From assembly GCF_963921235.1 (NCBI RefSeq), contig NC_086100.1, forward strand, positions 30,566,001 to 30,630,000: 64,000 bases of DNA, written 5' to 3'. A model generated the notes under the pieces. It was not told the origin of the DNA. It saw nothing but the letters and a program-made list of their open reading frames with translations, and ran no database searches. Made by a program: the position numbers and the translations under genes. Source of the stretch: Mobula hypostoma. Taxonomy: Eukaryota. Of this stretch, positions 11,087-57,714 are shown one piece after another (the first letter of the stretch is position 1; each line of letters opens with the position of its first letter).

Positions 11087-11532
11087 ATTTAAAGGTACAG
11101 TAGTTGCAACATTTTTGGTTCAATATCCTCCAGGCATACTTCTGATTTGTTGAAATATTTTGTATTAAATAGCAATTAATACAGTATTTAGTGTTATTGG
11201 CACATTGAATAATGAGTATTTTGTTTGCCAAGATGGTAGGAAATAAGTGTATTGATGTGAATAGGAACAGAAATAAAATCTGGCCTTGCCGTAAACCTTG
11301 TCAAGATCATGCACTAGTTATATCTCCTCAGCTAAATCTCCTTTCAGCTTTATTTGTTCCAAAGAAAATAATCCAGCGTGAATGGCCACATAGCTAAAAT
11401 TCTCCAGCCTGGGAACATCCTCATGAATCTCCTCTTGACCCTTTCTAGTGCTAACACATCCTTCCTGTAGCGTGGTGAAAAAACTGTAAACAGTGCCTAG
11501 TTGTGGCCCAAGTAATATCTTAACAGTTGACC

Positions 11533-12350
11533 AACACACACAAAATGCTGGAGGAACCCAGCAGGCCAGGCAGCATCTATAGAGAGGAATAAACGGTCAA
11601 TGTTTCGGGCCGAGACACTTCATCAGGACTGGAAAAGATGGGGGAAGATGCCAGAATAAAAAGGTAAGGAGAGGGGAAGGAGTACAAGCTAGAGGGTGAT
11701 AGTTGAAGCCAATTAGGTGGGGTGGGGTGGGGTGGTGAAGGTGAAGTAAAGAGCTGGGATGTGATAGATGGAAAATATAAAGGGCTGGAGAAGAATTTAT
11801 CTGATATGAGGGGAGGGTGGACCATGGAAGAAAGGGAAGAAGAAGGGAAACCAGAAGGAGGTGATTTGCAGGTGAGGAGGAGAAAAGGGATGAGAGGGTA
11901 ACCAGAATTGGGAATGGGAAAAGAGAGGAGGAGGACTGAGGAGCAATTAGAGAAATCGATATACGTGCCTTCAGACTGGAGGCTGCCCAGACGGAATATG
12001 AGGTGTTGATCCTTTGACCTAAGAGAGGCCTCATCAAGGCAGTGGAGGAGGCCATGAACTGACAGGTCAGAATGGGAATGGAAAGGTGAATTGAAATAGG
12101 TGGCCACTGGGAAGTCCCACCTTTTGTGGCTGATAGAGTGAAGGTGCTCAACAAATCAGTCGCTCCAAATGCAGTCGGTGTCACCGACGTAGAGAAGGCT
12201 TCACAGGCTGCACCAGACATAGCTGATGATCCCAACAGACTCACAGGGTAAGTGTCATCTCATCTGGATGGACGGTTTGGGGCCCTGAATGGTAGTGAGA
12301 GAGGAGAATAGGGGCAGGTGTGGCACTTGTCTTGCTGCAGGGTAAGTGTT
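11533..12350 (-). mobile_element. Penelope-like element fragment (GIY-YIG C-terminus + pLTR with degenerate hammerhead)
   Basis: Minus ORF VATYFNSPFHSHSDLSVHGLLHC...QHLIFRLGSLQSEG is homologous to the 16.4-17.1 kb copy; hammerhead-like motif at 11595-11631. Confidence 0.85.
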
Positions 12351-14135: not shown

Positions 14136-16149
14136 GATTTTTCTCTTTTCTGTGCCCCGGTAGGCACTAGCATTGCAGTCATCTGTCGTTCTATATGTGT
14201 TCAGTCTATAATAACTGTCAGAACAGACACATGCTTTAATATCTCATCAAAGGAACATCCTCTTTTACTTTGCTACACTGTCAGTCCTGTAATGAAATGT
14301 CAGCATAGATTAGGAGCTCAGAACCAGAAAGAAGGTTTAAACCTGTGACTAGCTCTTGAGCTAAGTTGACACCTTATTAGCCATGTCTGTGTACACTCAG
14401 GATTCTTAAGGAGCATGGCTGAATGAGGATTTCTAGACTATTTAGGAGTGAACACAGTGAGCAGCTCTACAGGTGGACACCAATAGAAATTTGGGATTCA
14501 CCTCTACAAACCTCAGTTGAAATCAGGTCAGTCTGAAGTCGGCAGATATTGGTTAATCCAAAGTATTAATGATATGGAGAATAATGTAGTCAGGAAAACC
14601 GTCGTCTTATTAATAATAGAATATGTTTGACAGGCTAAGTAGCATTCCCTGCTCCCATGTATTCCAAATACTAATTGTTGCTTTCAAGAGCAAAGAGGCT
14701 TTTATCTGAGAATGAGAGTGTACCCCTGTCACCCAAGAAGCAGACAAATTGAAATGTAAACATATCGGTTAATTAAAATGGTGTAGTATTACCACTTTAA
14801 AGTACGATGAATCAGAGAATTGTTTGAGCTTTATAATTAGCCATGTACACCACATTGTGCATCATTTGCAATGAAAGGGAAGCTCGACAGGTTCTCTCAT
14901 GGTTATCCACAGCCTGAAACACCGGGCAGTGTTTCCACGGAGCAACATCTGATCCAGCTTGGAACTCTCAGCAGCAAGAAGAAATAAATCCAACTAGTAC
15001 CTCAGCCTTGTAACCTAACGGCCATAATAAATAATGAGAACCTATTTGAAGGAGGAAGATGGGGAATTAGAAGCTATTTACACTACTGGAGTGATGCTAT
15101 CGATCAGGAGCAGCAACCTGCAGATAGGCCTTCATCTATGATGTCATTGTTATTTATGATTAGATACTGACAGTATTGCAGCCAAAGTCTTCTCTCTCAG
15201 ACAGCTTGATTCATTTATGATTATGATGTATTCAGCAGTTAAAGAAATAATCAGCAGTGGTAGGGAGTAGAAGGTGAGCATGGACGGAGGAGATTTCATA
15301 ATAGATGTGGCTTCATAACACATTCATAGAGCATTGGGTGGACACCACCTAAAGGCAATTAGTTGTTAAAAAAATCTGCAGTGCCCACTGCTCAGATATC
15401 TGAGTGATAGGTTTGCCAAATGATGCCGGCTAATCAACATTCTTACAGTCTTTAACTTATTCCAGGAGCTCCTTTTCTTCCTGAATCAGATAATAAAATT
15501 TTGTATCATTAGCTCTTTAGCTAAAGTGCTCTTCCAAAAACAACTACATTTATTTCTTTTTATAGAAACCGGTAATGTTTGAAGCAGGGAGGACTGGATA
15601 ACATTTGGTCAAGACTTGTCTAATTAGTATATAAGAAATGCAATTTTGGCAGCCACTGTTATACTAAAGAGCACAAAACACCTCAGCCAATATCTGTACT
15701 TCTACGTGTCATTCCAGTGAGCAGTTAACACCATGGCTCAGACTACATGGACAAAAAACAGTCTGCAAAAAACTGCAGCGTGCCCAAAATATCTGAAAGA
15801 CTTGAATTTGTATAACACCTTCTTCAATCATTGGGCAGTTCAGAACAACTTAGAACCAATGAAGTACTCTGAAAATGGAGTCTGCTATATTCTAACTTCG
15901 ATCAGGTTTACCCCGTTTGCAACCTATCTCCCAGAACAGCGATGAGAATTTTGTTGATGGTGTTGGTGATGAGTTAGCCATTCTGCAAAAGTGGCCCTCT
16001 GTGCTGTAAATCTAATTAGGTTTATCCTATTAATCATGACCAAGTAATAATTCCAAATGCAGGTGAGAATAGAAATATCACTCACAAGATTCACACATCA
16101 AAGTTGGTGGTGAACGCAGCAGGCCAGGCAGTATCACTAGGAAGAGGTA

Positions 16150-16186
16150 CAGTCGATGTTTCAGGCCGAGACCCTTCGTCAGGACT
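16150..16186 (-). ncRNA. Minimal type I hammerhead ribozyme motif (AUC triplet variant)
   Basis: Reverse complement: AGUC-CUGACGA-AGGGUCUCGGCCU-GAAA-CAUC-GACUG. Confidence 0.7.
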
Positions 16187-16384
16187 AACTGAAGGAAGAG
16201 CTAGTAAGAGATTTGAAAGTGGGAGGGGGAGGGGGAGATCCAAAATGATAGGAGAAGACAGGAGGGGGAGGGATAGAGCCGAGAGCTGGACAGGTGATTG
16301 GCAAAGGGGATATGAGAGGATCATGGGACAGGAGGTCCGGGGAGAAAGACAAGCAGGGGTGGGGGGAACCAGAGGGAAAAAAAA

Positions 16385-17066
16385 TGCATCTCCCCCATTT
16401 CACGTACATCTGCTCTCACTCCATCCTCCCACCACCCCACCAGGAATAGGGTTCCCCTGGTCCTCACCTACCACCCCACCAGTCTCCGGGTCCAACATAT
16501 TATTCTCCGTAACTTCCGCCACCTCCAACGGGATCCCACCACTAAGCACATCTTTCCCTCCCCCCCCCCCCGCTTTCCGCAGGGATCGCTCCTTACGCGA
16601 CTCTCTAGTCCATTCGTCCCCCCCAACCCTCCCCACTGATCTCCCTCCTGGCACTTATCCTTGTAAGCGGAACAAGTGCTACACATGCCCTTACACTTCC
16701 TCCCTTACCACCACTCAGGGCCCCAAACAGTCCTTACAGGTGAGGCGACACTTCACCTGCAAGTCGGCTGGGGTGATATACTGCGTCCGGTGCTCCCGAT
16801 GTGGCCTTCTATATATTGGCGAGACCTGACGCAGACTGGGAGACCGTTTCGTTGAACACCTACGCTCTGTCCGCCAGAGAAAGCAGGATCTCCCAGTGGC
16901 CACACATTTTAATTCCACATCCCATTCCCATTCTGACATGTCTATCCACGGCCTCCTCTACTGTAAAGATGAAGCCACGCTCAGGTTGGAGGAACAACAC
17001 CTTATATTCCGTCTGGGTAGCCTCCAACCTGATGGCATGAACATTGACCTCTCTGACTTCTGCTAA
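16385..17066 (+). pseudogene. PLE ORF C-terminus: Cys-rich linker + GIY-YIG endonuclease (disrupted)
   Basis: PLVLTYHP...AFRRDRSLRDSLVHS...PCKRNKCYTC...FTCKSAGVIYCVRCSRCGLLYIGET*RRLGDRFVEH...VATHFN...RLEEQHLIFRLGSLQPDGMN. VIY at 16773-16781, YIG at 16812-16820; frameshift in poly-C at ~16560; TGA at 16827 is CGA in the 25-kb copy; TAA at 17064-17066. Confidence 0.9.
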
Positions 17067-17369
17067 TGCCTCACCTCCCCCTCGTACCCCATCCGTTATT
17101 TATTTTTATACACACATTCTTTCTCTCACTCTCCTTTTTCTCCCTCTGTCCCTCTGACTATACCCCTTGCCCATCCTCTGGTTTTTCTTCCCCCCCCCCC
17201 AACTTGTCTTTCTCCCCGGACCTCCTGTCCCATGATCCTCTCATATCCCCTTTGCCAATCACCTGTCCAGCTCTTGGCTCCATCCCTCCCCCTCCTGTCT
17301 TCTCCTACCATTTTGGATCTCCCCCTCCCCCTCCCACTTTCAAATCTCTTACTAACTCTTCCTTCAGTT

Positions 17370-17406
17370 AGTCCTGACGAAGGGTCTCGGCCTGAAACGT
17401 CGACTG
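17370..17406 (+). ncRNA. Minimal type I hammerhead ribozyme (intact core; predicted cut after 17401)
   Basis: AGUC-CUGACGA-A-GGGU(CUCG)GCCU-GAAA-CGUC^GACUG: stem I AGUC/GACU, cores CUGANGA and GAAA, palindromic ACGU in place of stem III, GUC triplet. Confidence 0.82.
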
Positions 17407-18539
17407 TACCTCTTCCTAGAGATGCTGCGTTCACCAGCGACTTTGATGTGTGTTGCTTGAATTTCCAACATCTGCAGAATTCCTGTTGTTCACTCACAAG
17501 ATTGCCTGTCTCCTTTTATGGTATACGATGTCAGCCCAAACCTGAGATCAGCTCTTTTGGTAGGACTTGAACCCTCAGACCTTTTAACTTAGACATGTGT
17601 GTTTCCACTGAGAAATTCCTGGGCATACTGCTAAAGCTATCATGCTTTATTGAGAAAAATAATTCATTGGCTTTTTTGCACACAGATTTGTTTCACACCT
17701 TGACACTCAGAGCACCGTTTCATTCATAAAATACTGTAATGTGCTCAGCCTGATGTCCTTCCATAACCTACCTGCTGTCGATATTATACATTTCAGTAGC
17801 ACTATTTCTCAAGAACAAGGTTGTATAGAAAATTTATTGCAACTGGATTGATATATTACTCCATAATAAGTTGGTAAGAGTTATACCTAAACTTCAAATC
17901 AGAAGATACAGAACCATAGTAATTAACCCTCTCTGAGGCTGCCAGTATAAACTGATGCCTTTGTCTCCAAAACACATATTCTGAAAGGGCTGAGGCAAAA
18001 TATATCAGCATTAACAACTGCATGTGTGGAGAATATTATAACGATAAATGGGCTAAGTAGATTTATTTTGATGGCATCAAAAGTTTGAGAACCACGTTTT
18101 TCAATATGTTTGCTTTTAATGTCGCAGTCTTATTACAGAAACACTAACTGCTAAGTCAGTGGCAGGAGCAGAATAGCCACAGCACATGAAACCAGCAACT
18201 ACTTGTCCTGGCTGCTGGCTGTTCTGGAATTCAGTTTTACTTTCACCACCCTTTCTGTGAGGAACAACATTTTTTGAAAATGTTGTGCGTGGCATGTGCA
18301 TTAAAAATGAAGGAAGCAATGAAACAAGGAAATAAAGATCAACTTGAACTCCAATTTAAATTAAAAAGGAATTACCCAAAATAAGGATTTTTGGAAGGTC
18401 CATAATAAGCTCACAACATTAGAATAATTTATCTTCAACAAGGGAGATATGTTCCCTGCGTGTTAGTGCTGATACCCAAATAATAATGTCTTTTACTTTA
18501 AAGGATTAATGGTCTGAGTGTCTCATTTATAGTTACAGT

Positions 18540-22089: not shown

Positions 22090-22178
22090 CATGTTTGAGA
22101 TGCTGGAATCTGGAGCAACACACATAAAGCTGGAGGAAGTCAGCAGGTCAGGCATCGATGGAGGGGAATGGACAGTTA
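22090..22178 (-). mobile_element. Short PLE terminal fragment (tail end)
   Basis: agatgctggaatctggagcaacacacataaagctggaggaagtcagcaggtcaggca is the reverse complement of the PLE 3' terminus. Confidence 0.65.
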
Positions 22179-24770
22179 AAGTAAGCTTATATGCAATGGT
22201 TTTAGCCAACATGAGACTCCAGTTCTTCCTAAGATCTGAAATCAATTTTTAAAAAACTATTATTTTGAACATTGCAGAATAAACTCTGTCACTATCACCA
22301 AGCATCACTGACTTGGGCTAATAGCCCAGAGACTTGAACTTGTAATCTGAAGACTTGAACTAAATCCCACAATGTCAGCTAAGGAATGTAATTTCAGCTA
22401 CTTAAATAAACCTGGGATTAAACACACATCTGTAATGATAACTATTAAATTACCGCATTGCAGTAAAAGAGTTGATCCATTAGTGTCCTTTGCAGAGAGA
22501 AATCTGCCATCTAAATGTGACCCCAGATCCATGGGTGGGTGTACCCTAGTTACCATTTGAAATTGCTGAACAATCAGCTAAGTTATTTCAAACTGCTCTG
22601 AAGTTCAAAAAGGTGGCTCACTATCACCTCGTCAAGGTGTTTAAGCACAAGCATTTATTTCTGCCCTTACTAAAAATGTCTACATCCTACAGGTGATAAC
22701 AACGATTGTTTGCTATGGAATTGGATTTGTGGTATACTGGTACCTTGTGACCCTCAATACTGCTAATGTTTTCCTGTATCAACATTGGCAAAGTAACCAG
22801 ATACTACAGATACCCAACTCCCAATGAGATGTTCGTGCAGGATTTATTTTCTTTTAATAAAGGTTGTTGGAGAAATCAAAAAATTATATAAATGTTTTGT
22901 AAAATTATACTACATTATCAAGGCTTAAGATGTTAGATGAACAAACACTATTTGTCACCATGATTATAATCCAAAACAAAGCTAGAACAGATCGTATCAT
23001 TACTCAATGGAGAGGTATTCTTTATACTGAGTATTCAACCTTTAATTGCTGTCTTGCGCAACTTCAAACCACACACTTAGGACACCCAAAGTGATAATTA
23101 ATCATTATGTTTAGAAAATTTTCTTTTCCTATTTTCTGGATGGTGACACAGCAGTGTTGAGTGTGTTTGCAGTGTTGTTCTACAAAACAACATCTGCTGC
23201 TCTATTGTAACTACTCAATGAAAAAGAAATCCCAGATCTGAAACATAGTCATAGAACACTCCACACAGAAACAGGCCCTTTCAGTCCACACCGAACTGTT
23301 ATTCTGCTTAGTCCCATCAACCAGCACATGGACCATTGCACTCCATTCTCCTCCCACCCATGTATTGCACTCAAACCCACATCCACCACTTCTGCTTGCT
23401 CCAGACTCGCAACACCCTCTGAATGAAGAAGTCCCCTTAAATATTTCACCTTTCACCCTTAACCTGTGGCCTCTATTGCTGGGGACTCAGTGGGAAAGGC
23501 CTGCTTGCATTATCCTATCTATACCTTCATTATTGCCCTATATCTCTCAAATAGGACCACTGGTTTGCAGAGTCGCTTAGGTAGCAGGCCAAATGGAACT
23601 TAAGAGTAGATCAAAGCAATCTTCTTGTTGCCCCATCTTCCTCCATTCCCTCTCCTACTCGGAGCGCATATTCTAGAATCACTCGGGTCCAATGAAACCT
23701 CTTTTCAGTTGGAAACAGCAACAATAAATCTGTATTCTACCCATCTATCACTGCTGATTTATTATTTTGTAGTGGATTATGAAGACAGGCTGAATGAATG
23801 TTTCTGCTCCTATTAACTTAATGTTGACATGGATCATGAATGGAGTCTTAGCTGGTGGCCTATAGTTTCACTGAGATGATTGCTTGAACCTGAAGATGCT
23901 CAGGTGGTGTGCATGCCTGCAGCTTGGGGCAACTGCTCACACAGTGGGTGCTGTACATTGAATATGTGATCCCCAAACGGCTGCAGCAACAAGACTCTGT
24001 CAGTAGCAAGAATGATTCCCACAGATGGTGGCAGAAGTTGATTAATTATCTGTGTGAACCCCAAGTTGGTGTGTGCCACTGTTTAAGGATAAAGACCAAT
24101 TACAAGCAAGCCCTTTTTTAAAATCAAATAGTTTTCCAAGGAGGATATGAAATGAATAAAAATGGAATTTTTGTTGGAATATTTCTTTTTCCTGAAAACA
24201 CCTTTGAATTCTTAATGGCTGAAGCACAGATGTCTGTTTATTGCGTTATTTTAACAAAGTGAATCTAACTGCAGATTAGTCTGCAAGCATCTGTTTTTAT
24301 TGCTATTGTCTTTGTCTTTTGATGTTCTGGGACTTTCTCTTTGTCCTGTGTTTGCATGTTCCAATCAATAAAATTTGCCTCAGCATGGACAGAGAGATGG
24401 TGGTATTGTCTTGCCGTTATATATTTTTTTCAATCATGCAATGTGAAATAGAAACATTGAGACTAATTCCAATCCTACAAGCTTCCCAAGGGCAGAAAAA
24501 ACAGATTAATTCAACCCCAAAAAATACAAGCTGAGAAATGATGCTGTCAATATTGTCCTGCCAAAACAAAGACAGGGTGCTTATATAAACCCTTTATCAT
24601 TGTTAGATGTCCCATCCCAATTCACAGAAACATCATCAAACAAAATTTGACACCAATCCATACAAGGTGATATTTGTGGTTAGTGAAAGGTGTAGTTTTA
24701 AAGGAGCATCATACAGGGGGCAAAAGAATGCAGCTGAATGCAGTGAAAGTCCTGTTATGCATTAGTGGTG

Positions 24771-25512
24771 CAACACACATCAAAGTTGCTGGTGAACGCA
24801 GCAGGTCAGGCAGCATCTCTAGGAAGAGGTACAGTCAACGTTTCAGGCCGAGACCCTTCGTCAGGACTAACTGAAAGAAGAGCTAGTAAGAGATTTGAAA
24901 GTGGGAGGGGGAGGGGGATATCCAAAATGATAGGAGAAGACAGGAGGGGGAGGGATGGAGCCAAGAGCTGGACAGGTGATTGGCAAAGGGGATATGAGAG
25001 GATCATGGGACAGGAGGCCCGGGGAGAAAGACAAGGGGGAGGGGAGCCAGAGATGGGCAAGGGGTATAGTCAGAGGGACAGAGGGAGAAAAAGGAGAGTG
25101 AGAGAAAGAATGCGTGTATAAAAATAAATAACGGATGGGGTACAAGGGGGAGATGGGGCATTAGCGGAAGTTAGAGAAGTCAATGTTCATGCCATCAGGT
25201 TGGAGGCTACCCAGATGGAATATAAGGTGTTGTTCCTCCAATCTGAGTGTGGCTTCATCTTTACAGTAGAGGAGGCCGTGGATAGACATGTCAGAATGGG
25301 AATGGGATGTGGAATTAAAATGTGTGGCCACTGGGAGATCCTGCTTTCTCTGGCGGACAGAGCGTAGGTGTTCAGCAAAGCGGTCTCCCAGTCTGCGTCG
25401 GGTCTCGCCAATATATAGAAGGCCACATCGGGAGCACCGAATGCAGTATTCCGTTCACCAGCAACTTTGATGTGTGTTGCTTGAATTTCCAGCATCTGCA
25501 GAATTCCTGTTG
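24771..25512. mobile_element. Young PLE insertion: long inverted segment (24771-25450, GIY-YIG C-terminus on minus) + short sense 3' end (25451-25512); 15-bp TSD
   Basis: TSD tatgcattagtggtg at 24756-24770 and 25513-25527; the minus strand encodes YCIRCSRCGLLYIGETRRRLGDRFAEH...; closely similar by eye to the 16-kb copy. Confidence 0.93.
24832..24868 (-). ncRNA. Minimal hammerhead ribozyme motif (GUU triplet)
   Basis: Reverse complement: AGUC-CUGACGA-AGGGUCUCGGCCU-GAAA-CGUU-GACUG. Confidence 0.72.
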
Positions 25513-27061
25513 TATGCATTAGTGGTGGTTCATTTCTCTACCAAAGTTAAAACCATTGTTTTGATCATTAATGGTGATGCATCTGACGAAATATTTCATT
25601 TTCGAATAGATGTGAATGTTAAGAGGTTGTCCATTTGGTAATCCACAGAAGAAGACTCAAACAGGCAGTTTAATTATGACTCTCATATAAAACCAAAAGC
25701 TTCAGTCATTTTTTCCCAGTGGTACCAAATCCTTACTTTCGCTAATTTTGCCTTGTATAACACTGAACATACACTTTTTGTTTGCAAACTTGCTTTATCC
25801 GTTAAATCTTCCTAAATTGATAATTTTAAGTCAACAATATAAACTTAAAGATCATCTATTTATATTTATATAAACATTGAAGGTGACTGCATATTGGAAA
25901 ACAATTAGAGCAGTTGTGTGTGGATTTGTGTGAATACTGGCGGGCCCCTTAAATCCTGAATCATGCTACCGGCAGGTCATCAGTCCAATTATTTCTAAGC
26001 TGAAGGGACGACTCAGGAAAATGGCAGCAACATTGCTTTTGACGTGTTCAAGCTATGGTTACAAACTTCTCACTGTTTATGATGATGGTGAATTAGCATA
26101 AGCACTGAACATTACAGCTCAGTACAGGTCAGGGATTCCCAGCCATATTTATGCCATGGACCCCTACCATTAACTGAGGAACCCCTGGTATCGGCCTTTG
26201 GACCCACAATGTTGTGCAGACCTTTTAAAAGATTCAAAACAATTGAATCACAAAATTAATTGCACAATCCATGCCAAACCCTCTGCATTTTTCAGAGAAC
26301 ATGGTACATTTTTGAGGAAAGATCAGGTGTTGGTGTTCTAGCCAACATTAGTTCATCGACCACTGTCTCCCAAAAAGCAGCAAGAGATTGACCCTTTGCC
26401 TTGTTGCTGGAAGTTGGAATTTGCTGTGTACTAATTGACTGCCTTTTTAGCTCAAAGTAATTCACTGGTTGGAAAGCTGTTCATGACATTCTGAATTTTC
26501 AGTTTAATTTCCTTGTTAGAATCGGATGAAGAAACATTGAAACCCGGTAGACATCAGCAGCCCATTAACTCCTTAAGCCCATTCTACCATGTAATGATCT
26601 TGGCAAAAACATACAATTCTAGAAACAGATGGCATACATAGCTGTTACAAATGGAGCTATCTTCCACCTCTCCTCTCCTGGTCTGTAATCTTGTAGGTTA
26701 CAGATCCGCAATGCTCAAACAGGTACATATTAATTGGGATGAAGGTTTCTGTTTTCACCATCCCATTGAGCAGTAATTTCCAGACTCTTACTATTCTGAA
26801 TAAAAGGTGTTTTCCTCCACTTCCCTCTGTTTCCTGTATTAATTAACCCAAATTCATAGCCCATATCTATCAATCATGTCACACTAAGCCAATCAAATTA
26901 GCCACTTTCCCTTGGATCTGATGGTTATTTTCTTTCCATACTTGAACAGCTTTGATTGAGATCTCTTGACTGAACAAAAACAGCACTGCCTTGAAAGTTT
27001 CAGTCCTGAATAGATTTCCAGCACGGAATCAGAAAGCATGGCAGAATTGTTGAGCCACAGG

Positions 27062-35220: not shown

Positions 35221-37323
35221 CTCGGTGGTCAGTTAATTAGGTGCATTTGTACACCTGCTTGCGAATCCAAGTATCTAATCAACCAATTGTGGCAACAACT
35301 CAATATATAAAAGCATGCAGATGTGGTCAAGAGGTTCAGTTGTCATTTCAACCAAACATCAGAATTGGAAAGAAATGTGATCTAAGTGACTTTGACTGTG
35401 GAATGATTGTTGGTGCCAGATACATAAAGAGGCAAAAGTGGATATCAGACCACTGGAAAATGAAGATGGAGAGGAAGTAATGGGGGACAAAGAAATGATG
35501 GATGACCCTAATAAGTGTTTGGCATTGCTCTTCACTGTGGAAGACTCTAGTTGTATGCCAGAAATTGAAGAGTGTCAGTGGGCAGAAGTGAGTGTCATTG
35601 ATATTACTAAGGTGAAGGTGCTTGTGAAGCTGGAAAGTCTGAAGGTAAATAAGTCATTTGGACCAGATGGACTACACCCCAGGGTTCTGAAAGAGGTAGC
35701 TGAAGAGATTGGGGAGGAATTAATAATGATCTTTCAAGGATCACTAGATTCTGTACTGGTTCCAGAGGACTAGGAAATTACAAATGTCACTCCATTCTTC
35801 AAGGATGGAGGGAGGCCGAAGCAAAGAAATTATTGGCCAGTCACCGAGACTTCAATAGTTGGAAAAATGTTGGATTCTATGATTAAGCATGTGGTTTTGA
35901 GGTATTTGGAGGCACATGATAAAATAGGCTGAAGTCAGCATGTTATTTTTTTCCATGGGAAACTCTTTCCTGACAAATCTATTGGAATTCTTGAGGAAAC
36001 AATAGACAGGATAGATAAATGAGAGTCAATACATGTTGTTTAGGTGGATTTTCAGAAGGCCTTCGATAAGGCGCCGCACTTGAGACTGCTCAACAAGATA
36101 AGAGCCTAAGGTATTATAGGAAAGGTACTAGTATGCATAGAAGGAGATTGGCTGACCGGCAGCAGGCAACGAGTGGAAATAAAAGGGGCCTTTTCTGCTT
36201 GGCTGCCATAGATCCATGGTGTGCTGCAGGAATCAGTTTTGGGACCGCTTCTTTTCATATATCTCAATGATTTGGATGAAGGAACTGATGGCTTTCTGGC
36301 TGATATGCAATAGGTGGACGGGCAGGTTGTGTTGGGGAAGCAGGGTGTCTACAGAAGGATTTAGACAGATTGGGGAATGGTCAAAGAAGTGGGAGATTAA
36401 ATATAGTGTGGGGAAATGCAAGGTCTTGCCTTTAGCAGAAGGAATTAAGGTGTGAACTGTTTTCCAAATGGTGAGAAAATGCAAAAATCAGAGGCGCAAT
36501 GGCACGTGGGAGTCCTTGTGCAGGAGTCCTGAAGAGTTAACTTGCAGGCTGAGTCAGTTGTAAGGAAGGCAAATGCGATGTAGCATTCATTTTGAGAGGA
36601 CTAGAATACAAAAGCAAGGATGTGATGTTAAGGGTTTATAAGACATAGGTAAGACCATGAATGGAGTATTGTGAGCTGTTTTGGACCCCTTATCTAAGAA
36701 GAGGTGTGCTGGCAATGGGGAGGGCCCAGAGGAATTTCACAAGAATAATCCCAGGAAAGGAAGGGTTAATGTATGAGGAGAGTTTGATGGCTCTGACCCT
36801 GTACTCACTGGAGTTTAGAAGAATGAAGGGGAATCTCATTGAAAACGATTGAATATGGAAAGGCCTAGATAGGGTGATGTGGAGAGGATGTTTCCTATGG
36901 TCGGTGAGTCTGGGACCAGAGGTCACAGCTTCAGAATAGAGGGGCATCCATTTAAAAACAGAGATGAGGAAAAAGTTCTTTAGCCAGAGGGTGGTGAATC
37001 TGTGGAATTCATTGCCACAAACAGCTGTGGAGGCCAGTTCACTGGGTATATTTTAGGTGGAGGTTGATAGGTTCTTAATTAATGAGGGCATCAAAGGTTA
37101 CGGGGAGAAGGCAGAAGAATAGTGTTGAGAGGGATAACATATCAGCCATGATGGAATGGTAGAGCAGTCTCAATGGGCAAAATATCGAATTCTGCTATCC
37201 TGTCTTATTATCGAAGAGTATCTCTGAATGCGCAATATGTTAAACTTTGAAGTGAATGGGCTACAGCAGCAGAAGACTATGAACATATACTCAGGAAATG
37301 CCTAATAAAGTGGCCACTGAATG
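35221..37323 (+). mobile_element. Tc1-like non-autonomous DNA transposon split by CR1
   Basis: TIRs ctcggtggtcagttaattagg / cctaataaagtggccactga with TA flanks; transposase N-terminus (I)GKKCDLSDFDCGMIVGAR at ~35363-35420; resumes at ~37215. Confidence 0.7.
35421..37210 (+). mobile_element. CR1 LINE, ~1.8-kb 3' part with decayed RT
   Basis: LKVNKSFGPDGLHPRVLKEVAEEI...IFQGSLDSVLVPED; DFQKAFDK; EYCELFWTPYL; CR1 3'UTR. Confidence 0.9.
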
Positions 37324-37489
37324 TATCTTCCCTTGAGCAATTCCATTCCAGTCACCCCAACAAATTTTCTTCCAATCAACTTAGCATTCACCCACCTTGT
37401 ATTTCCTGAAATTTAAAAACATTCACAACCACTCACATAAAAGTTGCTGGTGAATGCAGCAGGCCAGGCGGCATCTCTAGGAAGAGGTG

Positions 37490-37526
37490 CAGTCGATGTT
37501 TCAGGCCGAGACCCTTCGTCAGGACT
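37490..37526 (-). ncRNA. Minimal hammerhead ribozyme motif (AUC variant)
   Basis: Reverse complement: AGUC-CUGACGA-AGGGUCUCGGCCU-GAAA-CAUC-GACUG. Confidence 0.7.
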
Positions 37527-37848
37527 AACTGAAGGAAGAGTGAGTAAGGGATTTGAAAGTTGGAGGGGGAGGGGGAGATCCAAAATGATAGGAGTCTGAG
37601 TCAAAGTGTGGTCGAAAAGTTGAAGAGCCGAAGAAATTACAGATGGGGAGCAGTGAGACATGGTTTCACTGAACTTCCGTCGAAGAGAGGATCTAAACTT
37701 CTTCGGTGTAGCCATCTCTCACTGCTCCCCATCTGTAATTTCTTCGGTTCTTCAACTTTTCGACCACACTTTGACTCAGACTCCTATCATTTTGGTTCTC
37801 TCCCTCCCCCTCCAACTTTCAAATCCCTTACTCACTCTTCCTTCAGTT

Positions 37849-37885
37849 AGTCCTGACGAAGGGTCTCGGCCTGAAACGTCGACTG
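37849..37885 (+). ncRNA. Minimal hammerhead ribozyme (intact; predicted cut after 37880)
   Basis: AGUC-CUGACGA-AGGGUCUCGGCCU-GAAA-CGUC^GACUG. Confidence 0.82.
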
Positions 37886-38284
37886 CGCCTCTTCCTAGAG
37901 ATGCTGCCTGGCCTGCTGCGTTCACCAGCAACTTTTATGTGTGTTGCTTGAATTTCCAGCATCTGCAGAATTCCTGTTGTTTGCCCAACCACTCACCTTT
38001 GGGTAATTCATAATGGTTGGAACAAGTGTCAGACTGGCATGGTTAAGGTTATGTAAAGCACCTGTTTACACGTGAAAATTTTGCGGCATGATCTGTACCT
38101 GCATTCATACACTTTTATGGCAGACAGAAGCAAGAAAACTGGAAACTAGATAAATCGGTTTATCCTTGCCACATGTATTGATGTGCAGGGAAACAATTTG
38201 TCTTGCTTGCTGTTGATGTAGATCAATTCATTGCAACATTGCATTGAGGAAACACAAGTTAAGTCAACAACAGAATACAAAGTG

Positions 38285-38448
38285 TCAAACGAGGAAGTCT
38301 TCAGATGCTGGAAATCTGAGCAATATACGCAAAATGCTGGAGGAACAGCAGGCCAGGCAGCACCTATGGAAAAGAGTACAGTCGACATTCGGGGCCAAAA
38401 TCCTTTGGCAGGACTGGAGAAAAAAGGCTGAGCAGTAGACTTGAAAAG
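38285..38448 (-). mobile_element. Old PLE terminal fragment with decayed hammerhead
   Basis: cagatgctggaaatctgagcaatatacgcaaaatgctggaggaac...cagtcgacattcggggcc...caggactgg. Confidence 0.7.
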
Positions 38449-42857: not shown

Positions 42858-43210
42858 ACAACATACAAGATGCTGGAGGAATGGCATCTCTGGAGGAAAA
42901 TGGACAGTCAATGCTTTAGGTCAGATCCTTCATGCGGACTGAAACATCTCAACCTGAAGCGTCAAACTACTCCTCATCTTTTTTTCTCCAGTCCTGCTAA
43001 AGGGTCTTGGCATGAAATGTCAACTGTTTATTCATTTCCACAGATGCTGCCTAGCCTCCAGCATTTTGTGTGTGTTGCCTGGATTTCCAGCATCTGCAGA
43101 TTTCTCTTGTTTCTAAAGGCTCAGTTGTACATTTTCTTCCATAGGTGCTGCCTGATCCACTAAGTTCCTTCAGTATTATGTGTTTGGCTCGAGATTTTAA
43201 CATCTGCCTC
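42858..43210. mobile_element. Cluster of old PLE termini (inverted arm + sense end, nested)
   Basis: Decayed hammerheads on minus (~42905-42941) and plus (~42989-43026); tail tgtgttgcctggatttccagcatctgcag. Confidence 0.65.
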
Positions 43211-55600: not shown

Positions 55601-57714
55601 CAGGTTTCCCCCGCCATCCGAAGGTAGAGCGTTCTTATGAAACGGTTCGTAAGCCGGAATGTAGTAAAGCGAAGAAGCAATTACCATTTATTTATATGGG
55701 AAAATTTTGTGAGTGTTCGCAGACCCAAAAATAACCTACCAAATCATGCCAAATTAGATTATGAAGATTAGATTATTGAAGACACGCAGTCCTCTTTTAT
55801 TGTCATTTAGTAAGGCATGCATTAAGAAATGATACAATATTTCCTCCGGTGTGATATCACAAAACACAGGACAGACCAAGACTGAAAAAAACTAACAAAA
55901 CCACATAATTATAACATATAGTTACAACAGTACAACAATACCATAACTTGCTGAAGAAGTCCATGAGCATAGTAAAAGTTCAAAGTCTCTCAAATGTCCC
56001 ACATCTCATGCAGACGGAGAGAAGGAAGAAAAACTCTACTTGCCATACCTGACCACGGTCCGACTCTGTGTCCCCGAAAACTTCGAGCTCTGATCAGCTC
56101 TCCCACACCGAGTACTGAGCGCCATCACTATCTGAACGAATTGACCTCCTTCTTGGTCACCAAAAGCAGGCAAAGCCGGGGATTTTGAGGCCTTCCCTTT
56201 GAAAGATTCCTGACCGCGCAGTAATGACAGCAGCGAACGAGCGTTTCAGAAATTTTTCCAGATGTTCCTCTGTGCTTTCATGTCCGTCTCCATCAAATCA
56301 GAATTGTCCACGGCCCCTATTTAACAGATACGATATCATTTTTCATCAGAGGGCTGCGAACGCACGGCGTGCTGCTCTCTCTCCTCCCGCCGTCTGATAA
56401 CATATAAAACCTAAAATAACAGTAACATATAGTAAAAGCAGCCTATATAAAGTAGAAATACTTTTCCACAATCATTGCCTGAACTGTTCTCCATAGCGAA
56501 AATCTCATGCAAGTGCCATCGGCAAAAACACAGCGCAAGCGATCTCCAGTAACCTTTAAGCTATGAAGCTGCCAAATCATACCAAATAACACATAAAAAT
56601 ACGCAGCCAATATAAAGTAGAAATAATGTATGTACAGTGTAGTATCACGGGAATCGGGAAGACATCGAGCACACTGCTGGTGTGTTAGGCTGAGTCATCG
56701 CAGGTTGGGGTGGTGCAGTGGCTCCCACCCTCCGGGCAGCGAACCGATACCGATCCGCGAAGCATGCAGGTCTACAGTGGTAGCCGGGACGCATCCAGCA
56801 CATCTTTAAGAAAAAAGCCAAAATAAACATGCTAATTAATTACGTGCCGGGTGGCACCTAATTAATTAGCATGTTTATTTCAGCTTTTTTCTAGAGATGT
56901 GCGGTGTGCCTCCCGGCTACCGCTGTATTCTCCGTGAATCAGTATCTGTCTGTGGCCTGGGGGTTGGGGTGGTGGGACACTGGGGTGTCATCTCATCATC
57001 TATCAGTGCAGGCAGGTCATCTTTTCCTATCTCTGCCTGCCTCGATGTCAAAGGTTGAGGTTCGTCGTCTGCTGTGGCTGATGTGGAAGGCTTGTTTGAC
57101 TTCTTAGCCTCGCGCACTTTTCTATCATACAGTTCTTTGTAAGGACTAAAACTAACTTGCAAATATGCCCAAACCGACGTACCCTTTCAAAATTAAAGTC
57201 GTACTTTATCATTACTCATTCGGTTTCGATTGTAATCCTTTCCTCTTCCAATTGCATCAGCTCTTCATCTATCAGTTCTTGGTCATGGGATGCCAAAACC
57301 TCTTCAACATCATCTTCGTCAACTTCCACGAGCCAAACTCACTTTGTCCTTACTTCGTTCACCACGATCAAAATGCTTAATTATGTCTAGTTTTACGCTA
57401 AGTGTAACACCTTTACGAGCTCCTTTAGGCTTTTCCGATACCTTAGAACTCATCTTGTAAATGGCTGCTCACAGGCATGTGTTAAAGCAATGCCGGCGAG
57501 AATGCCGTTCCGAATCCGGGGGATAGCGGCTGCTCGGGGCACGTGCTGCCTTTTTTTATCGCGCACTGATTTTTCTCACGCGCTGCTTTTTTTGCACGCT
57601 GCTGTTTTCATAACAGTGAAAACACGTTCTGTTCGCGAAAACAGGGAACTAATGTAGGTCTTTCGTAACAGTGAGCTTTCGTAAAGCGAACGTTCGAAAA
57701 GCGGGAGACACCTG
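55601..57714 (-). mobile_element. Tigger/pogo-type internally deleted DNA transposon
   Basis: TA TSD (55599-55600, 57715-57716); TIRs caggtttcccccgc../..gcgggagacacctg; ATG at 57453 gives MSSKVSEKPKGARKGVTLSVKLDIIKHFDRGE (CENP-B-like HTH); C-terminal EVDEDDVEEVLASHDQELIDEELMQLEE and YKELYDRK. Confidence 0.88.
55754..56396 (-). mobile_element. Non-coding retroposon with Rex-type 3' end and (TAATC)n tail, nested in Tigger
   Basis: Colinear with 59349-60019 (ctgatttgatggag..gaggaacatctg; aatgacaataaa..gaggactg..cataatct). Confidence 0.7.

What the first reader, a model, noticed from the sequence alone, without database searches (positions are those of the whole stretch)
37426..37996. Fully palindromic ~550-bp mini-Penelope element with a hammerhead on each strand, apparently formed by fold-back at a hairpin over the ORF start
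Seen: 11-bp TSD; 225-bp arms (37434-37658 / 37717-37941) differing at about 7 positions, several of them CpG transitions. Both arms share variants absent from the 16-kb and 25-kb copies (ataaaag, gtgagtaaggg, aaagttgga), so they derive from one molecule. Pairing continues imperfectly to 37673/37702 around a 28-nt loop, and the tail (37942-37985) is on the right only. The inner ~190 bp is not pLTR; on minus it reads MATPKKFRSSLRRKFSETMSHCSPSVISSALQLFDHTLTQT and joins the pLTR at ctcctatca. Inference: this is the PLE ORF N-terminus fused to the 3' pLTR by internal deletion, and the native imperfect hairpin gcagtgagagATGG...ccatgtctcactgc self-primed the second arm, which would explain a mismatched centre with near-perfect outer arms. 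A transcript of either strand would be a ~240-bp dsRNA rod containing a hammerhead: a retrozyme/viroid-like, coding-free unit and a possible source of PLE-silencing siRNA.
Basis: partly seen in the sequence, partly recalled or inferred. Interest (0 to 1): 0.8.

Follow-up and report, generated by a model that had tools for sequence, protein, structure and literature searches.

The report
Head-to-head mini Penelope retrotransposon insertion
This 550-bp palindrome is real, but it is the dead product of one insertion of a shortened Penelope-like retrotransposon, laid down as two mirror-image copies in the way this class is already known to integrate; nothing tested marks it as a viroid- or retrozyme-like RNA element, though copy number and transcription could not be checked.

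Summary
There is an 11-bp target duplication, two 243-nt arms (95% complementary) and a 28-nt loop. The well-matched 225-bp part of the arms has 7 differences, 4 of them at CpG. A 39-44-nt tail sits on the right only, and the inner 186 bp is unique in the window.

The minus strand 37715-37593 encodes 41 residues that align Met1-to-Met1, without gaps, at 54-59% identity to the N-termini of four shark Penelope-like (PLE) proteins. A whale-shark locus links that N-terminal domain to RT, a GIY-YIG endonuclease and a homologous hammerhead-bearing pLTR. The template was therefore an internally deleted PLE: ORF codons 1-41 fused to the last ~200 nt.

The architecture is ordinary for PLEs. Two other insertions in this window (16 kb, 25 kb) show the same plan: TSD, tail-less inverted copy, tailed copy, TSD. 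The published literature describes the same plan, including palindromes at inverted junctions and a self-priming hypothesis.

Simple self-priming does not fit the one-sided tail. Two priming events are favoured, joined at a native 14-nt imperfect inverted repeat (11 Watson-Crick + 2 G·T pairs).

The hammerheads are minimal motifs only: Rfam gives no hit and the left one carries a helix-III mutation. Earlier notes of this scan report many similar fold-back Penelope insertions elsewhere in this genome.

The parts
37426..37436 (.). Left target-site duplication, CAACCACTCAC
   Evidence: Exact 11-nt direct repeat with 37986-37996
37437..37594 (-). Left (inverted) copy, pLTR part. It lacks the tail and ends at ...CTTTTAT(GTG), the upstream reverse-transcription start region.
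   Evidence: blastn 91-93% to the pLTRs at 16094-16254 and 24773-24936. End positions compared in alignment A1.
37490..37527 (-). Minimal hammerhead motif of the left copy. Core CUGACGA ... GAAAC, with AUC in place of GUC (G16.2->A).
   Evidence: Pattern match at 37498-37522. The difference at 37497 is listed. No Rfam hit.
37593..37715 (-). Codons 1-41 of a PLE ORF (MATPKKFRSSLRRKFSETMSHCSPSVISSALQLFDHTLTQT). Contiguous with the left copy and spanning the loop.
   Evidence: ORF listing. P0003 residues 1-41 match query 1-41, E 2e-4 against 1.84e9 proteins. BLASTP 23/41 identical. Alignment A2 gives 54-59% identity to four shark proteins. tblastn.
37593..37595 (-). Deletion junction in the left copy: ORF codon 41 (ACT) joined to pLTR CTCCTATCA
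   Evidence: pLTR homology stops at 37594. Protein homology stops at residue 41.
37674..37701 (-). 28-nt non-palindromic loop, equal to ORF codons 5/6-14 of the left copy
   Evidence: The reading frame matches the shark homologues.
37659..37673 (.). Inner imperfect repeat, left half (antisense of codons 15-19)
   Evidence: Pairs with 37702-37715 by 11 Watson-Crick + 2 G.T of 14, binomial P 4e-5
37702..37716 (.). Inner imperfect repeat, right half: antisense of ORF codons 1-5 plus position -1. This is the far end of the left copy, and the junction with the right copy lies at 37716|37717.
   Evidence: 37716 is mismatched with 37659.
37717..37782 (+). Right copy, ORF codons 20-41 (SHCSPSVISSVLQLFDHTLTQT)
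   Evidence: tblastn places P0006 residues 15-41 and P0003 residues 12-41 on the + strand. Only residues from SHC onward are native-like.
37781..37941 (+). Right copy, pLTR part
   Evidence: blastn 88-92% to 17302-17490 and 24770-24936
37848..37885 (+). Minimal hammerhead motif of the right copy: helix I TAGTC/GACTG, CUGACGA, A, helix II GGGU..GCCU, GAAAC, GUC
   Evidence: Pattern match at 37853-37877. Features compared with the min-HHR description in PMC4209133. No Rfam hit.
37942..37985 (+). Tail, present on this side only. The canonical part runs to 37980 (...CCTGTTGT), followed by 5 nt TTGCC.
   Evidence: Alignment A1 against the tailed ends of the 16-kb and 25-kb copies. An older copy at 38288-38415 also reads ...GTTTGAC.
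37986..37996 (.). Right target-site duplication
16078..17503 (+). Comparator, a sibling insertion: 14-bp TSD, tail-less inverted pLTR copy (16092-~16377), then a 5'-truncated copy with the GIY-YIG C-terminus, pLTR and tail
24756..25527 (+). Comparator, a sibling insertion: 15-bp TSD, a long tail-less inverted copy (24770-25451) and a 61-nt tailed copy (25452-25512)

Best explanation
This is one integration event of a Penelope-like element (PLE) in a devil-ray genome. It left two 5'-truncated copies head to head between an 11-bp target duplication.

The template was an internally deleted PLE RNA. The first 41 codons of the ORF are joined, at a CT/CTCCT microhomology, to the last ~200 nt of the 3' UTR/pLTR, which carries the minimal hammerhead motif.

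Proposed sequence of events:
1. The left copy (sense on the minus strand) was primed on one target strand at the upstream, tail-less reverse-transcription start. It was copied through the deletion junction and the ORF start, up to the ATG.
2. The right copy (sense on the plus strand) was primed on the other strand at the downstream start, so it keeps the tail.
3. The two minus-sense cDNAs were joined where the end of the left cDNA (antisense of codons 1-5) can pair with the antisense of codons 15-19 in a second cDNA (11 Watson-Crick + 2 G.T of 14).
4. Extension from that annealed end produced the near-perfect outer arms, while the centre kept the native, imperfectly self-complementary ORF start as a mismatched stem and 28-nt loop.

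Shown: the anatomy, the PLE identity of all parts, the recurrence of the architecture, and the complementarity at the junction.

Inferred: the order of events, the use of two primers, and the pre-existence of the deletion in the RNA.

The element is non-coding and has since decayed (3% divergence between arms, mostly at CpG). It is most likely an inert by-product.
For: Anatomy:
- Palindrome, TSD, tail and arm differences.
- The pLTR parts match PLE copies in the window that carry a GIY-YIG endonuclease C-terminus.

ORF start:
- The inner peptide matches shark PLE N-termini from Met1.
- In whale-shark locus L002 the same N-terminal domain lies upstream of the DKG motif, RVT_1, GIY-YIG and a pLTR 77% identical to the focal one.

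Recurrence of the architecture:
- Two more insertions in this window have the same plan but different inner junctions: TSDs of 14 and 15 bp, a tail-less inverted copy on one side and a tailed copy on the other. The tail-less ends fall within 6 nt of each other.

Centre:
- The loop and ATG are contiguous in sense only with the tail-less copy.
- Complementarity at the junction has P 4e-5.

Literature:
- Inverted 5'-truncated copy plus a one-sided 30-40-bp tail is typical of PLEs (PMC8557442).
- The Anolis PLE protein nicks and extends both target strands and starts reverse transcription at two adjacent sites, with the tail lying between them (PMC11167929).
- Rotifer PLEs show palindromes at inverted junctions, and deletion derivatives flanked by inverted pLTRs and TSDs (PMC3846280).
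Against: - No full-length copy of this ray family was available, so the ORF-start identification rests on 54-59% identity over 41 residues to shark proteins.
- The native sequence upstream of the ATG is unknown.
- The first base after the annealed stretch (37716) is not the one templated by the partner. This needs a later substitution, an untemplated nucleotide, or a longer native hairpin.
- If two independent cDNAs carry the same deletion, a deleted master copy must exist. None could be looked for.
- In the other two inverted pairs the junctions show no comparable complementarity, so annealing at an inverted repeat is not a general rule.
- In vitro (PMC11167929) the two start sites did not differ between strands, so the constant tail asymmetry remains unexplained.
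Confidence: 0.72

Rival explanations
1. A single cDNA of the deleted PLE reached the ORF start. Its 3' end snapped back on a native hairpin (GCAGTGAGAG-ATGG...CCAT-GTCTCACTGC) and copied itself to make the second arm. In the only workable version, the snapped-back strand then had to switch onto a short, separately primed tailed cDNA near ...CTTTTATGTG to acquire the tail.
For: - The junction lies exactly at a native imperfect inverted repeat.
- Both arms share one deletion junction and private variants. A one-off template jump followed by self-copying would explain this without needing a deleted master element.
- Short tailed copies do exist: the tailed copy in the 25-kb insertion is only 61 nt.
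- Self-priming was proposed for PLE inverted junctions with palindromes (PMC3846280).
Against: - A pure fold-back of the tail-less left arm would copy the flank (GTGAGTGGTTG) after ...TATGTG. The PLE tail is found there instead.
- A fold-back starting from the tailed arm is excluded, because the loop and ATG read in sense only with the left copy.
- The tail-less end falls in the same start region as in two independent insertions, so it was target-primed.
- The model needs two annealing steps instead of one.
- The supposed hairpin is not more stable than shuffles.
Confidence: 0.2
2. A self-propagating, non-coding palindromic family, retrozyme-like or viroid-like. The whole hairpin is transcribed, processed by its hammerheads, re-copied as a unit by PLE enzymes, and feeds small-RNA silencing of PLEs.
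For: - The right end keeps the pLTR and tail that PLE enzymes recognise.
- Either strand would fold into a very stable rod.
- Animal non-LTR retrozymes are pLTR derivatives (bioRxiv 10.64898/2026.07.22.740005).
Against: - The inner segment occurs once in 64 kb, while pLTR fragments occur at eight or more places.
- There is no tandem arrangement.
- The left end is a reverse-transcription start site, not a transcript 5' end.
- The hammerhead motifs are minimal, degraded on the left arm, missed by Rfam, and sequestered in duplex in the rod.
- The arms have decayed by 3%.
- There are no transcription or small-RNA data.
Confidence: 0.05
3. An artefact or a secondary DNA event: an assembly fold-back chimera, or a later inverted duplication of a simple insertion.
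For: PLE inverted structures are known to trouble assemblies (PMC8557442).
Against: - The TSD flanks the whole structure.
- The arms differ at 7 sites with a CpG bias.
- The centre and the tail are asymmetric.
- A chimeric read would give a perfect palindrome without a TSD. A later duplication would have duplicated flanking DNA.
Confidence: 0.03

Closest known systems
Canonical EN+ Penelope-like element insertions with an adjacent inverted 5'-truncated copy and a one-sided 30-40-bp tail (Penelope/Poseidon clade; Evgen'ev & Arkhipova 2005; Craig et al. 2021, PMC8557442; Arkhipova et al. 2013, PMC3846280)
   Same: - TSD around the whole unit and head-to-head inverted copies.
- Tail on one end only.
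- pLTR with a minimal hammerhead motif.
- Palindromic sequence at the inverted junction.
- An internal, microhomology-type deletion derivative.
   Different: - Both copies are truncated at almost the same point, so the unit is nearly a complete palindrome.
- All of the RT and EN coding sequence is missing.
- The junction falls on the ORF start.
Anolis Poseidon PLE (PAc) in vitro target-primed reverse transcription (Frangieh et al. 2024, PMC11167929)
   Same: - Both target strands can be nicked and extended.
- There are two adjacent reverse-transcription start sites, and the tail lies between them. This matches the tail-less and tailed ends seen here and in two sibling insertions.
   Different: - In PAc the ORF starts inside the hammerhead, and reverse transcription starts 111-118 nt into the ORF. 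Here the ORF start is not within the terminal ~200 nt.
- In vitro, no strand bias of start sites was seen, whereas here the tail is always on one side.
Minimal hammerhead ribozymes of metazoan PLEs (Cervera & De la Pena 2014, PMC4209133)
   Same: - CUGANGA and GAAA boxes and a GUC cleavage triplet.
[quoted passage not shown]
- A short helix I (5 bp) and no helix III loop.
- Palindromic ACGU on the right arm.
- Pairs of motifs on opposite strands 100-700 bp apart were already reported.
   Different: - Position 11.1 is U, giving G.U or A-U instead of the conserved G10.1-C11.1 pair.
- The left-arm motif has ACAU.
- Activity is untested.
Animal non-LTR retrozymes (tandem hammerhead repeats; Li et al. 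2026 preprint, 10.64898/2026.07.22.740005)
   Same: Non-coding, derived from a PLE pLTR, and carrying a type-I hammerhead motif.
   Different: Retrozymes are head-to-tail tandem monomers that give circular RNAs. This is a single inverted pair with a TSD.
L1 twin priming (Ostertag & Kazazian 2001; recalled from my own knowledge, not read here)
   Same: Two cDNAs are primed from the two nicked target strands and joined at microhomology, giving an inversion within one TSD-flanked insertion.
   Different: In L1 the inverted part comes from a different, more 5' stretch of the RNA, so no palindrome results. Here both copies cover the same 3' stretch.

Membership tests
Penelope-like element (EN+ PLE) insertion | Terminal repeat (pLTR) homologous to copies linked to an RT + C-terminal GIY-YIG ORF | tested here: met
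   The arms are 88-93% identical to pLTRs at 16 kb and 25 kb, which follow a GIY-YIG C-terminus. That endonuclease is 68% identical to the one in whale-shark locus L002, which hits Pfam GIY-YIG above its cut-off. RVT_1 is matched only weakly there.
Penelope-like element (EN+ PLE) insertion | Complex insertion: an adjacent inverted 5'-truncated copy, an optional 30-40-bp tail at one end, and a TSD | tested here: met
   The same plan is seen at 16078-17503 and 24756-25527. Described in PMC8557442 and PMC3846280.
Penelope-like element (EN+ PLE) insertion | Coding sequence of the PLE ORF | tested here: met
   Only codons 1-41 are present. They are 54-59% identical to shark PLE N-termini. RT and EN are absent from this copy.
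Hammerhead ribozyme (type I, minimal PLE variant) | Conserved core CUGANGA ... GAAA and an NUH cleavage site | tested here: met
   CUGACGA, GAAAC and GUC on the right arm; AUC (16.2 G->A) on the left arm.
Hammerhead ribozyme (type I, minimal PLE variant) | G10.1-C11.1 pair and palindromic 15.2-16.2 (PMC4209133) | tested here: not met
   11.1 is U in every young copy in the window (CCUGAAAC). ACGU is intact on the right arm only.
Hammerhead ribozyme (type I, minimal PLE variant) | Match to a curated covariance model | tested here: not met
   No Rfam hammerhead family hits at gathering score or at E<=10. Minimal PLE motifs lack helix III, so this is expected.
Hammerhead ribozyme (type I, minimal PLE variant) | Self-cleavage | not testable with these tools
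   Needs an in vitro assay. Published minimal PLE hammerheads cleave poorly and only as dimers or with protein (PMC4209133, PMC11167929).
Retrozyme (non-LTR, animal) | Head-to-tail tandem monomers each carrying a hammerhead, yielding circular RNA | tested here: not met
   The only direct repeats in 37200-38200 are the TSD and a 12-nt chance pair; the copies are inverted. Circular RNA is not testable here.
Viroid-like RNA | Autonomous circular RNA replicon with ribozymes of both polarities | not testable with these tools
   Only a genomic DNA copy with a TSD is seen. The rod fold is trivial for any palindrome.
L1-type twin-priming inversion | The inverted segment comes from a different, upstream part of the template | tested here: not met
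   The two copies cover the same stretch of the template.

The most novel reading that the evidence does not exclude
The deletion derivative (ORF codons 1-41 fused to the terminal 200 nt with the hammerhead and tail) may be a living non-autonomous 'mini-Penelope' family. Its ORF-start inverted repeat would then systematically nucleate head-to-head pairing of the two cDNAs, so that each insertion becomes a long hairpin locus able to give double-stranded RNA against the PLE 5' end and pLTR.
Probability: 0.08. Interest if true: 0.6.

Novelty: new member of a known kind. Interest (0 to 1): 0.25.

Why it matters
The locus is a clean natural record of how Penelope-like elements integrate.

- It shows a tail-less start on one strand and a tailed start on the other. 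This agrees with the two reverse-transcription start sites and the two-strand nicking seen in vitro for an Anolis PLE.
- The join sits at a short inverted complementarity, which bears on the unresolved choice between self-priming and dual priming.
- It places the ORF start of this elasmobranch PLE lineage outside the terminal ~200 nt, unlike the Anolis element.

As biology of the host it is probably inert. It does not open a new class.

Tried and rejected
- Rfam at gathering score and at E<=10: no hammerhead. The hits were only spurious long-hairpin miRNA models that any palindrome attracts.
- Monomer folds of the hammerhead regions: no better than shuffles.
- The search for homologous proteins on residues 1-41: no candidates.
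- The look-up of encoding contigs with the two window ORFs and with P0003: nothing on record.
- DNA for the shark genes P0006 and P0007 could not be fetched because the sample's file was too large.
- Exact 20-mer scan of metagenome contigs: one unrelated chance hit, L001.
- Whether the whale-shark copy has tail sequence just upstream of its ATG: the similarity does not exceed shuffles, so this was dropped. That copy also has about a 41-nt deletion in codons 7-37, so conservation of the hairpin could not be tested.
- Splicing as the origin of the deletion: rejected. The pLTR side has no AG acceptor before CTCCTA in the sibling copies.
- Fold-back starting from the tailed arm: rejected on loop orientation.

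Full report
**Observation**

The region reads as described. An exact 11-nt direct repeat (CAACCACTCAC, 37426-37436 and 37986-37996) brackets an inverted repeat. Its arms are 37431-37673 and 37702-37944 (243 nt, 95% complementary), separated by 28 nt.

A position-by-position comparison gives 7 differences within 37434-37658 / 37717-37941. Four of them are CpG transitions. The innermost 15 bp carries 4 mismatches. The right arm continues into a 39-nt canonical tail plus 5 further nt before the TSD. The left arm abuts the TSD directly.

Both arms share three variants that the copies at 16 kb and 25 kb lack. A TSD around the whole structure, asymmetric ends and CpG-biased divergence argue against an assembly chimera or a later duplication.

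**What the parts are**

blastn of the element against the window splits it into three parts:
- two outer segments (37434-37594 and 37781-37981) that are 88-95% identical to repeats at 16092-16254(-), 17302-17490(+), 24770-24936(-) and 25452-25517(+), with older relatives at 11.5, 22.1, 38.3 and 43.0 kb;
- an inner 186 bp (37595-37780) that occurs nowhere else in the 64 kb.

The 16-kb copy shows what the repeat is. Upstream of it runs the C-terminus of a GIY-YIG endonuclease (…GLLYIGET*RRLGDRFVEHLRSV…), which stops at 17066 and is followed by a ~420-nt 3' UTR ending in the repeat. The repeat is therefore the terminal part (pLTR) of a Penelope-like element (PLE).

It carries the boxes of the minimal PLE hammerhead: TAGTC-CUGACGA-A-GGGUCUCGGCCU-GAAAC-GUC-GACUG. 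This has the extra nucleotide after position 9 and no helix III loop, as described by Cervera & De la Pena (PMC4209133). The match is at motif level only:
- no Rfam hammerhead model hits, even at E<=10;
- the monomer folds are no better than shuffles;
- position 11.1 is U in all young copies;
- the left-arm copy has GAAACAUC, which breaks the palindromic ACGU.

**The inner segment**

On the minus strand, 37715-37593 reads MATPKKFRSSLRRKFSETMSHCSPSVISSALQLFDHTLTQT.

An exhaustive HMMER search of 1.84 billion representative proteins with the 100-aa ORF gave three hits. Two cover only the pLTR-derived part; at least one of them (P0001, Mobula hypostoma STARD3NL isoform X3) is a gene model that ends in pLTR-derived sequence. 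The third, P0003 from the whale shark, matches residues 1-41 to its own residues 1-41 (E 2e-4 for the whole library). BLASTP gives 23/41 identical and 30/41 similar, without gaps.

A search seeded with P0003 and a second seeded with its relative P0006 brought in further shark proteins. In the alignment, four of them (P0003, P0006, P0007, P0008) start with the same 41 residues at 54-59% identity, Met1 to Met1.

P0003 continues into the region homologous to P0004, which has …KPADKGGAVVVW…KIHKP…GRPIV…. This includes the DKG motif that Craig et al. list as diagnostic for PLEs.

A 72-kb whale-shark locus (L002) could be fetched. There the same N-terminal domain (57085-57681) is followed on one strand by:
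- the DKG region;
- an RT with YIDD (a weak RVT_1 match);
- a GIY-YIG endonuclease (Pfam hit above cut-off, 68% identical to the window's 16-kb copy);
- a terminal repeat with CUGAUGA…GAAAC that is 77% identical to the focal pLTR.

tblastn of the shark proteins against the window hits only this locus. Homology to the proteins stops at T41, where shark proteins continue RYHSHI…. Homology to the pLTR starts at CTCCTATCA. An internal deletion of the rest of the ORF and the first ~235 nt of the 3' UTR is therefore required. Splicing is unlikely, because the sibling copies have no AG before CTCCTA.

**The architecture is ordinary for this class**

Two other insertions in this window have the same plan.
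- 16078-17503: 14-bp TSD, an inverted tail-less copy of ~285 nt, then a 1.1-kb copy with tail.
- 24756-25527: 15-bp TSD, an inverted tail-less copy of 682 nt, then a 61-nt copy with tail.

The three tail-less ends fall within 6 nt of one another (…ATGTG, …ATGTGTG, …ATGTGTGTTGC). The tailed ends lie at …CCTGTTGT(+5). The inner junctions lie at three different places, so each pair was made de novo.

This is the published picture:
- Craig et al. (PMC8557442) describe the adjacent inverted 5'-truncated copy and the 30-40-bp tail at one end.
- Arkhipova et al. (PMC3846280) describe inverted pLTRs with TSDs, a one-sided tail, deletion derivatives, palindromes at the inverted junction, and a self-priming hypothesis.
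- Cervera & De la Pena note pairs of minimal hammerheads on opposite strands 100-700 bp apart.
- Frangieh et al. (PMC11167929) show that an Anolis PLE protein nicks and extends both target strands and starts reverse transcription at two adjacent internal sites, with the tail lying between them.

Earlier notes of this scan report many fold-back mini-Penelope insertions with the same fixed plan elsewhere in this genome. I treated those notes as leads; my own three loci agree with them.

**How the palindrome formed**

Homology to the shark proteins shows that the minus-strand reading is native and continuous from the ATG (37715), through the loop (codons 5/6-14), into the left arm. The plus-strand reading of the centre (MVSLNFRRREDLNFFGVA) is not native; the right copy is native only from SHC (37717) onward. 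The tail-less left copy is therefore the one that reaches the ORF start, and the right copy begins at codon 20.

The last 14 nt of the left copy's cDNA (37702-37715) pair with the antisense of codons 15-19 (37660-37673) by 11 Watson-Crick and 2 G·T pairs (P about 4e-5 for a random junction). Both halves of this repeat are native coding sequence.

It is not a notable structure in itself. The native segment folds no better than shuffles and prefers other small hairpins.

Pure self-priming fails in both directions:
- A fold-back copy of the tail-less arm would continue into the flank (GTGAGTGGTTG), but the PLE tail is found there.
- A fold-back from the tailed arm would put the loop in the opposite orientation.

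The simplest account is two cDNAs, one per nicked strand: tail-less start on one, tailed start on the other. The 3' end of the first anneals to the second at the 14-nt complementarity and is extended along it. This requires the deletion to have been present in the RNA.

A hybrid remains possible: self-copying of one cDNA, then a switch onto a short tailed cDNA. It would allow the deletion to be a one-off template jump. I give it about 0.2.

Three loose ends remain:
- position 37716 is not the templated base;
- it is unknown whether GCAGTGAGAG upstream of the ATG is native;
- the systematic tail asymmetry is unexplained.

**Function**

Nothing indicates activity.
- The unit has no RT or EN.
- The 100- and 117-aa ORFs are fusion products that run open through the pLTR frame.
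- The arms have diverged by 3%.
- The hammerhead motifs are weak, and in a full-length transcript they would be locked in a -490 kcal/mol duplex.
- The arrangement is inverted, not tandem, so it is not a retrozyme.
- Copy number, transcription, small RNAs and long-read support could not be tested with the tools available.

**Verdict**

The identification of the ORF N-terminus and the internal deletion is correct. The mechanism is partly right: a native inverted repeat lies at the join, but simple self-priming does not fit. The viroid/retrozyme reading is unsupported. This is a new member of a known kind of PLE insertion, of modest interest as a natural footprint of the two-strand, two-start-site integration mechanism.

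Noticed in passing
window 37416-38010, 17302-17489; protein P0001: One reading frame stays open through the last ~200 nt of the pLTR, across the hammerhead and the tail (…SVSPDEGSRPETSTAPLPRDAAWPAAFTSNFYVCCLNFQHLQNSCC). The 16-kb copy has a 12-nt in-frame deletion there. The annotated Mobula hypostoma protein STARD3NL isoform X3 (P0001) ends in this pLTR-derived peptide, which is either exonisation or an annotation artefact.
   Followed up: partly
L002:57025-57471 (whale shark NC_063348.1): The RefSeq model 'prostatic acid phosphatase-like isoform X1' (P0009) takes its last 149 residues from the N-terminal domain of a decayed PLE copy. Similarly, 'mucin-2-like' of Hemiscyllium (P0006) is a PLE N-terminus followed by frameshifted low-complexity sequence.
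   Followed up: partly
window 37981-37985: Five nucleotides (TTGCC) lie between the usual tail end (…CCTGTTGT) and the TSD. An older copy at 38288-38415 reads …CGTTTGAC at the same place. The downstream reverse-transcription start therefore seems to wander by at least 5 nt, rather than these being untemplated bases.
   Followed up: partly
window 16378-16388: The inner junction of the 16-kb inverted pair carries a run of eight A (GAAAAAAAATG) between the end of the inverted copy and the start of the ORF-bearing copy. This may be filler or untemplated addition. Unlike the focal locus, there is no inverted complementarity at this junction.
   Followed up: no
window 11515-12300 (-), 22098-22154 (-), 38288-38415 (-), 42990-43112 (+): Four older PLE 3'-end fragments of a related family, with decayed hammerhead boxes (for example CUGAUGA…GAAACAUU at 11.6 kb). 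The 11.6-kb copy is tail-less and has no inverted partner. Together with the three young insertions this makes at least seven PLE ends in 64 kb.
   Followed up: partly
window 16822-16830: The GIY-YIG motif of the 16-kb copy is interrupted by an in-frame stop (YIGET*RRLGDRF), so that copy is dead too.
   Followed up: no
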